A stretch of 62,875 bases of DNA, counting the filler, from Octopus bimaculoides (taxonomy: Eukaryota): NCBI RefSeq assembly GCF_001194135.2. It is 6 parts of 6 records of this genome, joined end to end, with 100 filler letters (N's around TTAATTAATTAA, not from the genome) between each part and the next. Parts side by side here need not be neighbours in the genome. Positions count along the whole stretch, not along the records: positions 30,464 to 42,319 come from NC_068990.1; 5 more parts are not named here. One strand, given 5' to 3'. Every line of letters begins with the position of its first letter. Position 1 is the stretch's first letter. The notes under the pieces are model-generated. The model worked only from the letters and a program-made list of their open reading frames with translations. It searched no databases and had not been told where the DNA came from. Below, in pieces: positions 30,176 to 42,575 of the stretch. Made by a program: the position numbers and the translations under genes.

Positions 30176-31338
30176 TCATACCAGCGTTCTTCATTATTCT
30201 AATTATAATTATTATTAATCTCAGCATCATCAATATATTATCCTTATTATATTTATATTTACATTCATGATTATTTGTAAATCATAATTTTCCCTCTTTA
30301 ATTAAAGTTGACCAATTTCAAGGAATTTCTTTTAATTAAATTATCTCAATGCCTCTGAGTCAGNNNNNNNNNNNNNNNNNNNNNNNNNNNNNNNNNNNNN
30401 NNNNNNNTTAATTAATTAANNNNNNNNNNNNNNNNNNNNNNNNNNNNNNNNNNNNNNNNNNNNATATATATATATATATATATATATATACGAGAGAGTG
30501 GGAAGTACTGATACCATGGGAAAATGAGAATAAATTGAAATAATTCTTCAAATATCTGATCGTCATCGAATAACGGCTATTTATCTCATATGGGTATAAA
30601 CAGTAATAACATGACCATCAATAACAATAAGATTATCAACAGCAGAAGTCAGCTTCCCATTTATCAATCTTGAAGTTTAGCTTTTTGCAGTTGTTACTAT
30701 CATTGCTGCTGCTGTAACTGTTGTCGTTGTTGTTGTTGTTGTTGCTGTTTGACATTCAGTTCCAAACTGATTGAATAGACTTCTCACCGAAAATGTTGAA
30801 GCTGTGTCTTTGTCTCCTTTTATCCATGTTCTGCAACTTTCTTCGAGAAGGCAGTGAGAATGTGTAAGAGATCTGGGTGCAATCTCTGACAGGTCAGCCG
30901 ACTACAAAGAAACTATTTCATTAGCTCTCTGGTTGTTAGTATCATTATAGTGGGAGCCTTAGCATAATCGCGTAGATGTGGTGTCGATATAACGAAAAGT
31001 ATGTCCTTGTTGTCTGCATCCAGTCACAAACACTGCATTGTGTTCTTGTTGAATATAACTATGGATAGCACAGTCTACATAGGTGTTAACTGGTTATTAA
31101 TGCCTCCAGAGAAAGGCACCAAGACACATTTTGTGATGAGAGTACAGTCGATTTTATCATCGACTTCAGAAATTGATTGTTACTATTTTACCAATAACAG
31201 AATGATGCAGTTCAGACTTGGCCCCGGCACAATTTGAAAACAGAAATAAGAATAGGAAACTAAGCACAGCAAAGTATTTTGTCTGTCACTCTGCCGATTT
31301 TCCTAACTATCGCACTTATATTTCTATCGTTAACATCA

Positions 31339-31696
31339 GGCGCAGGAGTGGCTGTGTGGTAAGTAGGTTGCTTACCAGCCACATGGTTCTGGGTTCAGTC
31401 CCACTGTGTGGCACCTTGGGCAAGTGTCTTCTACTATAGCCTCAGGCCGACCAAAGCCTTGTGAGTGGATTTGGTAGACAGAAACTGAAAGAAGCCCGTC
31501 GTATATATATGTNNNNNNNNNNCGCTTGTCAACCGATGCTGGTGTGTTTACGTCCCCTTAACTTATTGGTTCAGCAAAAGAGACCGATAGAATAAGTAAT
31601 AGGCTTACAAATAATAAGTCCTGGGGTCGATTTGCTCGACTAAAGGCGGTGCTCCAGCATGGCCTCAGTCAAATGACTGAAACAAGTAAAAGAGTA
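31339..31696 (+). mobile_element. SINE family A, near full length
   Basis: Head, central TA microsatellite (gap) and TAAAAGAG tail are all present. Confidence 0.93.
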
Positions 31697-36570: not shown

Positions 36571-36686
36571 CCAATATTCCGCAAAGGTATACATATGCAG
36601 TGGTATAATGTGTATGTATATGCGCGGTATGTGTGTGTGTGTGTGTGTGTGTGTGTATACATATATATATATATATNNNNNNNNNN

Positions 36687-40506: not shown

Positions 40507-40805
40507 GACGAGGGTCCCAGCTGATACGACCAACGGAACAGCTAGCTCGTGAAATTAATGTGCAAGTGGCTGACCACTCCACAGACACGCGTACCCTTAA
40601 CATAGTTCTCAGGGAAATTCAACGAAACACAGAGTGTGACAAAGTCGGCCCTCTGAAATACAGACACTACTCATTTTGGCCAGCTGAGTGGATTGGAGCA
40701 ACGTGAAATAAAGTGTCTTGTTCAAGGACACAACGCGTCGCCGGGGATCGAGTTCACGACCTTGCGATCGTGAGCTCAACACCTAACCACTAAGCCACGC
40801 ACCTT
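40507..40805 (-). mobile_element. Chimeric SINE: family C-type head and core with family D-type tail
   Basis: The head and core match 1981-2298 and 24467-24783; the tail matches 52103-52280. Confidence 0.8.
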
Positions 40806-40967
40806 CATATATGTATATGTACGTATGGATAGATGTATGTATGAATGTAGCTATGTATGTGTATGCATGTATGTATGTATGCACGCATATATGTACGTAT
40901 ATGCATGTATGTATGTATTATGTATGTATGTATGTATGCATGTATGCATGTATGTATGTATTATGTA

Positions 40968-40997
40968 GGCTCATGAGCGGTTGTGTGGTAAGAAGTT
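40968..40997 (+). mobile_element. SINE family A head, first 30 nt, interrupted
   Basis: GGCTCATGAGCGGTTGTGTGGTAAGAAGTT versus GGCGCAGGAGTGGCTGTGTGGTAAG at 31339; apparently resumes as AAGAAGCTTGCTTCC at 42268. Confidence 0.7.
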
Positions 40998-40998
40998 G

Positions 40999-41933
40999 AC
41001 AAGAGCTTGGGTCTGCGGGTTGCCACCTGGGATAGAACCCGAGTGGATAGAAGACACTATCCGCTGGGGTCTGAGTGACAGCGGGTCCAAGCTGCTTAAT
41101 GTTAAAATATTGCCGGCGGCTGATTGGGTTGGGTCAAAAGCTGTTTTGACACTGTGGACCCAATCAGCTAAAATCTAGTCTTTCCAGATTTTTTTGAAAA
41201 TGGCCGGTTGCAGGCACCCAGTGATACTTGAGGGACACCCCCTCCCAAGTATCACCTGTGCCTGGAACCAGGCCACATTAAAAAGAATTGTCCCCAGGAC
41301 CTGAGAAGGGTCCTAGAAGAGTTGGTTGAGTAAGAGATCCCCCTCCTCCTTCGCAGGGAGAGATGGAGGCAGTCGAGGAGGTGGAGACCTCCCCGAAAGA
41401 AAAAGGGGAAAAAAGGAAGAAGGTGGGAAACAATGTCCCCCCCTCCCCGAAGGACCCCGAAGGACCCCGAAGCTGTAGGAGGGAGGGAAGATCCTTCGGT
41501 TAAAGCAGAGGAAGTACACCCTCCTGTATCAAAGGCGAGAAAAAAGAAGAAAAAGAATGGGCCAGTGCCGGCGATTAGCATTGCATGGAAGCATGTCCTG
41601 AAACCTCGTCGGTGGGTATTTGTGCCACCGACGGAGGAAACTGTGGCCTCTCCCAGTATGATAAATTAGGAATTTGTGATCTTCTTTCTTAAGGTAGGGG
41701 CCGTAGGGAACTTTGTGAGGAATGTGGAAGGTCGGGAAGAGGTGGTCCTGTCCTGCACTGAAAGCCCGGATTGACCTCTGCAGGTGGCTGCGGAGATCAT
41801 GGCGGAAAATGATTTCTGCAGGGTGATAGCCTCCTTTACCAAGGACGAATACAATTTTTTCTTATGGGGCCCCGACTTGCGACTGCAGGCTTGCCTTCAA
41901 GCAACAAGAGACTTAGTCGGGGCGGTAGAGTAA
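40999..41933 (+). pseudogene. Decayed L1/Tx1-type ORF1 (gag-like; RRM-like segment plus CCHC zinc knuckle)
   Basis: TRAWVCGLPPGIEPEWIEDTI..., VILEGHPLP, then a -1 frameshift into K(Y)HLCLEPGHIKKNCP (41247-41294; CX2CX4HX4C with TGT>TAT), a Lys/Pro-rich linker, and a C-terminal segment ending LVGAVE* at 41931-33. Several stops and frameshifts. Confidence 0.75.
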
Positions 41934-42096
41934 GAGGTCTAAGTGCCTCAATTTGAACTTGGTGATTTTGGTAAGAGGCTATGCGCCTCAATTTGAAAGA
42001 ACGATTGAATATTTGCTGAACTTTTGTGAGATTTGATTGGTCAGAGGCTCAGCGTCTCAATTTGTAACTGTTGTAAGAGGTTCAATACCTCATTTG
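41934..42096 (+). other. Array of four GAGGY-N5/6-RYCTC-A(A)TTTG hairpins
   Basis: Stems at 41934/41945, 41975/41985, 42044/42054 and 42077/42087, with compensatory or wobble changes. Confidence 0.8.
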
Positions 42097-42575
42097 TGTT
42101 TTGTTTTTTTTTTAAAGAACAATGTTTTCGGGAACTAGCAATCGGTGGGCGTTGTCTGCTTCCCCCACCAACCATCTCTTTTTTTCATTCCATCATCATC
42201 ATTGTGTCTGCGTCCAGCCCGCAAACTTTCATCTGTATTATGCCTGTATGGCAAATGTAATGAAATAAAGAAGCTTGCTTCCGCGCATGCGTTGGGTTAT
42301 TTGCTGTCTGGATTTTGTANNNNNNNNNNNNNNNNNNNNNNNNNNNNNNNNNNNNNNNNNNNNTTAATTAATTAANNNNNNNNNNNNNNNNNNNNNNNNN
42401 NNNNNNNNNNNNNNNNNNNTATATATATATATATATATATGTTATATATATATATATTATATTTATATATATATGTACATATATATGAATCTCTTTACAT
42501 ACATACATACATACATATGAACACACACACACACATATGCATGCATGCATACATACACACACATTATATATCCAT

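What the first reader, a model, noticed from the sequence alone, without database searches (positions are those of the whole stretch)
41934..42096. Four co-varying stem-loops starting one base after the ORF1 stop codon
Seen: GAGGT-ctaagt-GCCTC, GAGGC-tatgc-GCCTC, GAGGC-tcagc-GTCTC and GAGGT-tcaat-ACCTC. Each is preceded by TAA or TCA and followed by AATTTG or ATTTG. Loops and spacers differ (starts 41, 69 and 33 nt apart) while pairing is always kept (C-G, T-A, G-U variants). Inference: selection on RNA structure, for example iterated binding sites for the element's zinc-knuckle ORF1p or a partner RT, or a translation or stability signal. Wobble pairs work on the plus-strand RNA, matching the ORF orientation.
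Basis: partly seen in the sequence, partly recalled or inferred. Interest (0 to 1): 0.7.

Follow-up and report, generated by a model that had tools for sequence, protein, structure and literature searches.

The report
Four repeated short hairpin motifs, selection unproven
Just after the end of a broken copy of an octopus gene sit four copies of a 30-base motif that can each fold into a tiny hairpin, but the evidence that the folding itself was preserved by selection is too thin to call.

Summary
The sequence facts hold. Four same-strand units, GAGGY-loop-RYCTCA, lie at 41934, 41975, 42044 and 42077, against 0.22 expected by chance. The first starts on the base after a TAA. Each unit is one copy of a roughly 30-nt direct repeat, (T)TGGTAAGAGGC-TMAGY-GCCTCAATTTG.

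"Co-varying" is overstated. Three of the five pairs never vary, one shows a G-U variant, and one shows a single compensatory change; 115 of 500 shuffles do as well. The hairpins are weak: z is -1 to -1.9 alone and +0.16 for the whole region. In context only two of the four are predicted to form.

The upstream "ORF1" is a 5'-truncated, frameshifted, stop-ridden copy of a real coding family. Its only database relative is Octopus sinensis LOC115225585 (about 78% nt identity, dN/dS 0.08). That copy breaks off before the hairpin region, so no family alignment could be made. No RT, no LINE end and no Rfam match were seen.

Most likely this is a locally duplicated palindrome-bearing motif in the untranslated tail of a dead gene copy. 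A selected array of protein-binding hairpins remains possible, at about 0.25. Interest is low to moderate.

The parts
40984..41933 (+). Decayed, 5'-truncated copy of a protein-coding family. Its relative is Octopus sinensis LOC115225585 (P0001). Window 40984-41704 aligns to L001 10301-10973.
   Evidence: Full HMMER search gave E 3.8e-15; the protein's name comes and its locus. blastn shows 78% identity. tblastn places P0001 residues 101-186 and 164-277 in two different frames. dN/dS is 0.077 over 63 codons. In-frame stops lie at 41331, 41667 and 41772.
41931..41933 (+). TAA that ends the last open stretch (53 codons). It is also the 5' flank (TAA) of repeat unit 1.
41927..41959 (+). Repeat unit 1. 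Hairpin 41934-41949, read either as GAGGU/GCCUC with a 6-nt loop or as GAGG[u]C/GCCUC with a bulge.
   Evidence: 39.1 bits. Alone: dG -6.4 kcal/mol, z -1.55. Pairing probability in context: 0.35.
41968..41999 (+). Repeat unit 2. Hairpin 41975-41989, GAGGC/GCCUC, loop UAUGC.
   Evidence: 43.1 bits. Alone: dG -8.4 kcal/mol, z -1.86. Pairing probability in context: 0.97.
42037..42068 (+). Repeat unit 3. Hairpin 42044-42058, GAGGC/GUCUC (one G-U pair), loop UCAGC.
   Evidence: 40.6 bits. Alone: dG -5.7 kcal/mol, z -1.03. Pairing probability in context: 0.01, because a longer alternative helix wins.
42070..42100 (+). Repeat unit 4. Hairpin 42077-42091, GAGGU/ACCUC, which holds the only compensatory change; loop UCAAU. 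The 3' flank is ATTTG, one base shorter than in the other units.
   Evidence: 35.9 bits. Alone: dG -6.7 kcal/mol, z -1.64. Pairing probability in context: 0.99.
42097..42116 (+). T-rich tract (TGTTTTGTTTTTTTTTT) ending in AAAG, directly after unit 4.
42264..42269 (+). The only AATAAA in this tail. A G/T-rich stretch follows. It is a plausible polyadenylation signal about 330 nt after the TAA. No A-tail appears before the piece ends at 42319.

Best explanation
The stretch is a cluster of four same-orientation copies of a roughly 30-nt motif, (U)UGGUAAGAGGC-UMAGY-GCCUCAAUUUG(A/U)AA. It lies in the untranslated tail right behind the last open stretch of a dead, 5'-truncated paralogue of an octopus gene family. 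That family looks like an ORF1-type protein and is probably derived from a retroelement.

The motif most likely arose by local duplication of a founder unit that already held a 5-bp palindrome. Possible routes are replication slippage, unequal exchange, or template jumping during reverse transcription. On this reading the hairpin potential of all four units is inherited, not maintained independently. The few differences between units are transitions that happen to be compatible with pairing.

In this copy the array does nothing that is under selection, because the gene it follows is broken. If the motif had a role in the source element, the most likely one is as iterated binding sites for a protein on the sense RNA. 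In that case the invariant flanks (GUAAGAGG and CCUCAAUUUG) would matter at least as much as the helix.

Shown here: the repeat itself, its strand, the dead ORF and its real coding family, and the lack of significant covariation or unusual stability. Inferred: the duplication origin and the neutrality.
For: - The units are direct repeats that include non-stem flanks. Mean pairwise identity is 0.85 for stems, 0.83 for the 3' flank and 0.53 for loops, so the conservation is not specific to the helix.
- Covariation is not significant. Three of five pairs are invariant, there is one compensatory cell, and 115 of 500 shuffles match it.
- Folding is no stronger than in shuffled sequence: z is +0.16 for 186 nt and -1.0 to -1.9 for single units. 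Only units 2 and 4 are predicted to form in context.
- 5-bp hairpins are as frequent in the rest of the piece as here.
- The host copy is dead: three in-frame stops, two frameshifts and a 5' truncation.
- No Rfam family matches, even at E<=10.
- A covariance model of the unit finds no further copy in 63 kb of octopus DNA.
Against: - TRF finds no tandem array.
- The spacers (16, 44 and 9 nt) do not align significantly with each other or with a unit. A plain tandem duplication followed by uniform neutral decay therefore does not explain well why only the 30-nt cores stay alike.
- All 20 stem cells still pair although the neighbouring ORF has decayed. Given 4 random substitutions this has probability 0.003 to 0.09.
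- The wobble variants fit only the sense strand.
- Loops vary most.

These points are what a selected hairpin array would also give.
Confidence: 0.5

Rival explanations
1. One reading: an array of four short RNA hairpins kept by selection on pairing in the sense transcript. They would serve as multivalent binding sites for the element's own RRM/knuckle-type protein or for a partner reverse transcriptase, or as a stability or localisation signal.
For: - 20 of 20 stem cells pair, with one C-G to U-A double change and G-U variants that work only on the + strand.
- Loops (0.53 identity) vary more than stems (0.85).
- The cores are conserved while the spacers are unalignable.
- The array is on the same strand as a coding family under strong purifying selection (dN/dS 0.077).
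- That family's architecture resembles RNA-binding type I ORF1 proteins, whose CCHC motifs are reported to act in specific mRNA packaging (PMC4120745, read).
Against: - Covariation is not significant (115/500).
- The helices have only 5 bp and are no more stable than shuffles.
- Unit 3 has a pairing probability of 0.01 and unit 1 of 0.35 in context.
- The non-helical flanks are as conserved as the stems.
- The one other family copy lacks the region, so there is no comparative support.
- Neither RRM nor CCHC reaches a Pfam threshold.
Confidence: 0.25
2. A linear sequence motif rather than a helix. Three units carry GUAAGAG, a 5' splice-site-like heptamer, and three of four carry an invariant CUCAAUUUG. 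The array could bind U1 snRNP, as the 5'-splice-site-like elements in papillomavirus late 3' UTRs do to dampen polyadenylation (own knowledge). It could instead bind another RNA-binding protein or a microRNA, or mark a short intron that ends at the T-tract plus AG at 42116.
For: - GTAAGAG occurs at 41930, 41971 and 42073, and GTCAGAG at 42040. The piece holds 5 copies on the + strand and 0 on the - strand.
- The flanks are as conserved as the stems.
- A T-rich tract plus AAAG follows unit 4, and an AATAAA lies downstream.
Against: - Splicing from 41930 to 42116 reads only 7 more codons before a stop, and the other two donors lie after the stop, so no donor extends the ORF usefully.
- Unit 3 has a poor donor (GUC).
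- The relative LOC115225585 is a single-exon model.
- No expression data are at hand.
Confidence: 0.1
3. DNA-level palindromes. GAGGC-N5-GCCTC would be repeated binding sites for a dimeric DNA-binding protein, for example subterminal transposase or regulator sites.
For: The units are perfect or near-perfect inverted repeats with fixed 5-nt spacing in three of four units.
Against: - The variants in units 1 and 3 break the palindrome at the DNA level (A-C on the other strand), while they remain pairs in + strand RNA.
- No terminal inverted repeats and no transposase were seen.
- All units are embedded in an asymmetric, strand-specific flank.
Confidence: 0.05
4. Coding repeats. Units 2 to 4 are spaced by multiples of three (69 and 33 nt) and read V-R-G-(Y/S)-(A/I)-(P/S)-(Q/H)-(F/L) in one frame. 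The array could therefore be a C-terminal peptide repeat of the ancestral ORF, reached through a frameshift in this dead copy.
For: The spacings are 69 and 33. The GTA/GTC and GGC/GGT differences are synonymous in that frame (read directly).
Against: - A TGA lies between units 2 and 3 in that frame, and there are many stops upstream of it.
- Unit 1 is in another frame.
- No protein in the collection matches any + frame of 41934-42319.
- Most differences between the units are non-synonymous in that frame.
Confidence: 0.03

Closest known systems
3'-tail stem-loops of stringent-type LINEs (eel UnaL2, zebrafish ZfL2) that the element's ORF2 protein recognises and that partner SINEs share (PMC1636434, PMC4176376; found)
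   Same: A short hairpin in the untranslated 3' part of a retroelement-like transcript, on the sense strand, proposed as a protein recognition site.
   Different: - Those are single hairpins at the very 3' end, followed by short terminal repeats, and they are shared with a SINE.
- Here there are four copies right behind the first ORF.
- At least 220 nt of unrelated sequence follow, with no terminal repeat or A-tail before the piece ends.
- No RT was seen, and no SINE partner was found in 63 kb.
Type I LINE ORF1 proteins (one or more RRMs directly upstream of a CCHC knuckle; Khazina and Weichenrieder classification as summarised in PMC4120745)
   Same: The family protein P0001 has two blocks that look like RRMs by eye (beta-alpha-beta pattern, 'AWVCGLPP' and 'KAVLTLW'). 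They are followed by a knuckle-like HxCx4Hx4C motif and a basic tail. The family is under purifying selection.
   Different: - No Pfam RRM hit even at E<=10.
- zf-CCHC scores 14-15 bits against a cutoff of 20.8, and the first Cys is F or Y in both copies.
- The structure model is useless (pLDDT 38.6).
- No ORF2 is seen next to either copy.
Internal short tandem or dispersed repeats in transposable-element UTRs (general knowledge; a microsatellite makes up most of the 3' UTR of octopus RTE-2_OV, PMC9115989)
   Same: Repetition of a short unit in the untranslated tail of a mobile-element-like gene in an octopus genome.
   Different: The unit here is about 30 nt, palindrome-bearing and irregularly spaced, and TRF does not call it a tandem repeat.

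Membership tests
LINE 3'-tail recognition stem-loop (stringent type) | Hairpin lies at the extreme 3' end of the element, just before terminal short repeats or an A-tail | tested here: inconclusive
   About 220 nt of non-repetitive sequence follow unit 4, with no terminal repeat or A-tail up to the edge of the piece at 42319. The element's true end cannot be seen.
LINE 3'-tail recognition stem-loop (stringent type) | The element encodes a reverse transcriptase/endonuclease ORF2 | not testable with these tools
   No RT-like ORF appears in the 385 nt after the TAA or in the 10 kb downstream of the relative in L001. The window copy is cut by the edge of the piece, and the L001 copy is cut at 10973.
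LINE 3'-tail recognition stem-loop (stringent type) | The tail is shared with a partner SINE or with other copies | tested here: not met
   Covariance model R1, run with filters off over the window plus L001 (63 kb, both strands), finds only the four units. The next best hit scores 11.9 bits. The sample is small.
Structured RNA under selection (covariation criterion) | Significant compensatory variation at helix pairs | tested here: not met
   One compensatory cell, three invariant pairs, and 115 of 500 shuffles as good. Only four paralogous units were available, so power is very low.
Structured RNA under selection (covariation criterion) | Folding energy below that of shuffled sequence | tested here: not met
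   z is +0.16 for 41925-42110 and -1.0 to -1.9 for single units.
Any curated Rfam family | Match at the gathering score, or any match overlapping 41934-42096 | tested here: not met
   No match overlaps the units at E<=10. There are no gathering-level matches in the whole piece.
Type I LINE ORF1p | CCHC zinc knuckle | tested here: not met
   PF00098 scores 13.9-15.3 bits against a cutoff of 20.8. The first Cys is replaced in both the window copy (Y) and P0001 (F).
Type I LINE ORF1p | RRM domain(s) immediately upstream of the knuckle | tested here: inconclusive
   No Pfam or PDB sequence match. The AlphaFold model has pLDDT 38.6. The resemblance rests on reading the sequence by eye.
Simple tandem repeat | Head-to-tail copies with a regular period | tested here: not met
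   TRF finds no array at score >=30. The spacings are 41, 69 and 33. A suspected decayed fifth unit in the 69-nt gap is not significant (P 0.18 and 0.63) and the model does not find it.

The most novel reading that the evidence does not exclude
A cephalopod-restricted retroelement family, with an ORF1-like protein carrying two RRM-like blocks and a variant knuckle, would use an array of four minimal hairpins placed immediately after its ORF1 stop codon. The array would act as a multivalent cis-packaging signal for that protein, kept by selection on pairing in the sense RNA.
Probability: 0.15. Interest if true: 0.5.

Novelty: new member of a known kind. Interest (0 to 1): 0.25.

Why it matters
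If the array were a selected packaging or recognition signal, it would be a rare case in which the cis-preference of an ORF1-type protein could be tied to a defined, iterated RNA site. It would also give a handle on an otherwise unannotated octopus element family. As things stand it is an ordinary short repeat in the tail of a dead gene copy. Its main use is as a ready-made motif and covariance model for a genome-wide check in cephalopod assemblies.

Tried and rejected
Searches for further copies or relatives:
- A word-indexed protein search with the decayed ORF found nothing.
- Exact look-up of 10 window ORFs found none in the collection.
- A full HMMER search found one true relative, P0001. 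The other two hits are WD40 noise.
- A search with P0001 found only itself.
- The contig of P0001 was fetched (L001). Its copy ends before the hairpin region, so it gives no comparison.
- Metagenome scans, by protein and by motif, gave 15 single chance hits with no homology.
- Viral-contig scans, by protein and by motif, gave only single chance hits.
- A three-frame translation of 41934-42319 searched as a protein found nothing.

Ideas tested and dropped:
- Decayed fifth unit in the 69-nt gap: rejected as not significant.
- Tandem repeat: rejected by TRF.
- Intron from the GTAAGAG at 41930 to the AG at 42116 that would extend the ORF: rejected, because the joined frame stops after 7 codons.
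- Readthrough or termination signal for hairpin 1: judged unlikely (own knowledge). A helix starting at +1 after the stop lies inside the ribosome's mRNA channel, and the next in-frame stop is two codons on.
- Structure prediction of P0001: pLDDT 38.6, so no fold search was run.
- Rfam at E<=10 and at the gathering score, and a tRNA scan: nothing relevant.
- Self-BLAST: no second copy of the element in the piece.

Full report
**What is in the sequence**

- GAGGT-ctaagt-GCCTC at 41934
- GAGGC-tatgc-GCCTC at 41975
- GAGGC-tcagc-GTCTC at 42044
- GAGGT-tcaat-ACCTC at 42077

They are preceded by TAA, TAA, TCA and TAA, and followed by AATTTG three times and ATTTG once. A search for GAGGY-N4-7-RYCTCA finds these four sites and no others in the window, all on the + strand. 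The expectation from shuffles is 0.22, and none of 100 shuffles reached four.

The units are copies of one longer direct repeat of about 30 nt, (T)TGGTAAGAGGC-TMAGY-GCCTCAATTTG(A/T)AA. The TAA that ends the upstream open stretch is itself the 5' flank of unit 1.

**Is the pairing more than inherited?**

On the alignment of the four units (A2), all 20 stem cells form standard or G-U pairs. However, three of the five pairs never vary. One pair has a single G-U variant (unit 3). One pair has a single compensatory cell (C-G to U-A, unit 4). In the shuffle control, 115 of 500 shuffles reach the same covariation score and the same count of double changes.

MAFFT treats the T in unit 1 as an inserted base next to an intact C-G pair. 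That leaves only three substitutions in the stems.

I simulated four random substitutions on four consensus stems. All pairs survive in 0.3% to 9% of trials, depending on the share of transitions. All observed changes are transitions, which puts the case at the lenient end. If units 1 and 4 share their T by descent, the number of independent events falls further. This is suggestive at best, and the site was picked because it looked good.

**Thermodynamics**

- The 186-nt region folds no better than its shuffles (z = +0.16). The minimum-energy fold keeps only hairpins 2 and 4.
- Folded alone with short flanks, the units reach -5.7 to -8.4 kcal/mol with z of -1.0 to -1.9. Between 11 and 30 of 200 shuffles fold as well.
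- In a 390-nt context the mean pairing probabilities are 0.35, 0.97, 0.01 and 0.99 for units 1 to 4. Unit 3 loses to a longer alternative helix.
- Five-base-pair hairpins with 4-7-nt loops occur about six times per 100 nt across the piece, and no more often here.
- The G-U variants do make the + strand the only strand on which all four helices can form.

**Pattern of conservation**

| Part of the unit | Mean pairwise identity between units |
|---|---|
| Stems | 0.85 |
| 3' flank | 0.83 |
| 5' flank | 0.62 (higher in the GTAAGAGG part) |
| Loops | 0.53 |
| Bases beyond the 3' flank | 0.29 |

The spacers are 16, 44 and 9 nt long. They do not align significantly with each other or with a unit. 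TRF reports no tandem array.

So the conserved object is a 30-nt island, and the helix is only part of it. This is the best argument that the motif mattered in some ancestor. It argues for a sequence-plus-structure site rather than for a helix alone.

**Context: the 'ORF1'**

The frame that ends at TAA 41931 is open for only 53 codons. Further upstream it carries stops at 41772, 41667 and 41331.

A full HMMER search of 1.84 billion representative proteins found one real relative, P0001 (E 3.8e-15). It is a 281-aa protein named 'uncharacterized protein LOC115225585 [Octopus sinensis]', encoded on chromosome record CM016886.1 of GCA_006345805.1. Window 40984-41704 matches its locus L001 10301-10973 at about 78% nucleotide identity.

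The window copy starts at P0001 residue 101, right after a (TATG)n microsatellite. It needs two frame changes to follow P0001. It is therefore a dead, 5'-truncated copy.

The family itself is a real coding family. Over the 63 ungapped codons that both copies share in frame there are 20 synonymous and 7 non-synonymous differences, giving dN/dS 0.077 and dS 0.66.

By eye, P0001 has two RRM-like blocks followed by HxCx4Hx4C and a basic tail. That is the layout of type I LINE ORF1 proteins (PMC4120745). None of this passes a test:
- Pfam gives only zf-CCHC, at 14-15 bits against a cutoff of 20.8.
- The first Cys is missing in both copies.
- PDB sequence search gives nothing.
- The structure model is unusable (pLDDT 38.6).

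No RT or endonuclease ORF lies beside either copy. 'LINE ORF1' is thus a fair guess, not a finding. The C-terminal 130 residues of the window frame have no relative anywhere. Both copies do keep that frame open across the part they share.

**Why the decisive test could not be run**

The L001 copy is cut at 10973 by a microsatellite. That position corresponds to window 41704, which is 230 nt before unit 1. Nothing further downstream in L001 resembles window 41705-42319.

Other routes also failed:
- No other relative exists in the protein collections.
- None of ten window ORFs is on record.
- No + frame of 41934-42319 matches any predicted protein.
- Scans of metagenome and viral contigs by protein and by motif gave only isolated chance matches.
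- A covariance model of the unit (R1), run without filters over the window and L001, finds the four units at 36-43 bits and nothing else above 12 bits.

The tools on hand hold no cephalopod genome beyond these loci.

**What it most likely is**

My best reading, at about 0.5, is a locally duplicated, palindrome-bearing motif in the untranslated tail of a dead copy of an ORF1-like octopus gene. The hairpin potential would be inherited from the founder unit, and the few pair-compatible transitions would be luck.

In its favour are the strand logic, the variable loops, and the conserved cores between unalignable spacers.

Smaller rivals:
- **A linear motif.** Three units carry the 5' splice-site-like GUAAGAG, which occurs five times on the + strand of the piece and never on the - strand.
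- **DNA-level palindromes.** The asymmetric variants argue against this.
- **A coding peptide repeat.** Units 2-4 are in one frame, but a stop lies between them.

An intron from 41930 to the AG at 42116 would not extend the ORF. A role for hairpin 1 in termination or readthrough is unlikely, since it starts at +1 after the stop and the next in-frame stop is two codons away (mechanism from own knowledge).

**Comparison with known systems**

The nearest functional analogue is the 3'-tail stem-loop of stringent-type LINEs such as UnaL2 and ZfL2, which the element's ORF2 protein recognises (PMC1636434, PMC4176376). That analogue differs from the present case in several ways:
- It is a single hairpin.
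- It sits at the very 3' end, next to terminal repeats.
- It is shared with a SINE.

None of these features was met or testable here. No Rfam family matches.

**Verdict**

'Covariation' is not demonstrated, and the interpretation cannot be decided with the data on hand. I file it as a new member of a known kind (short repeats with hairpin potential in the tail of a mobile-element-like gene), with interest 0.25.

A more striking structure lies nearby: the 33-bp hairpin inside the coding region at 41201-41275. It is present in both copies, with z of -8.9 in the window and -6.4 in L001. It is listed under things noticed in passing.

Noticed in passing
window 41201-41275 (+); homologue at L001 10518-10590: A long, near-perfect hairpin (about 33 bp) lies inside the coding region and spans the knuckle-like motif. 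In the window copy it folds at -49.1 kcal/mol with z -8.85. In the O. sinensis copy it folds at -43.9 kcal/mol with z -6.4. Several C-to-U differences between the copies keep pairing as G-U on the + strand. Rfam's nearest model is mir-306, at 33.8 bits against a gathering score of 52. It could be a substrate for A-to-I editing or small-RNA processing. It is far more unusual than the four small hairpins.
   Followed up: partly
window 40700-40975: A tRNA-derived SINE-like fragment (about 40700-40800) is followed by a long (TATG)n microsatellite that abuts the 5' truncation point of the gene copy at 40976-40984. The microsatellite draws spurious sub-threshold miRNA hits (mir-297, mir-3149, mir-466).
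   Followed up: partly
window 31338-31692; L001 5557-5601, 9452-9487, 20705-20773: A shared interspersed repeat, 85-87% identical between the window and the O. sinensis locus. This fits a cephalopod (Octopus-like) origin for the piece. ARAGORN finds no tRNA gene.
   Followed up: no
window 41930, 41971, 42073 (and 41330): The heptamer GTAAGAG, which resembles a 5' splice site, sits in the 5' flank of units 1, 2 and 4. It also occurs at the first in-frame stop of the decayed ORF (GAG TAA GAG at 41328-41336). The piece has five copies on the + strand and none on the - strand.
   Followed up: partly
window 41971-42100: Units 2, 3 and 4 are spaced by 69 and 33 nt, both multiples of three. In one frame they read VRGYAPQF, VRGSASQF and VRGSIPHL. 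A TGA lies between units 2 and 3 in that frame.
   Followed up: partly
window 42264-42319: A single AATAAA is followed by a GCGCATGCG palindrome and a G/T-rich stretch. It looks like a polyadenylation site without an A-tail. The piece ends 50 nt later.
   Followed up: no
window 31513-31522 and 36677-36686: Two runs of 10 N (assembly gaps). At least the second lies inside a (TA)n/(CA)n microsatellite.
   Followed up: no
L001 3012-4292 and 11505-11935: Next to the O. sinensis relative lie two features. One is a 426-aa tandem C2H2 zinc-finger ORF. The other is an LTR-like segment, TG...CA with an internal AATAAA, followed by a primer-binding-site-like TGGTGACCCC. Neither is related to the finding.
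   Followed up: no
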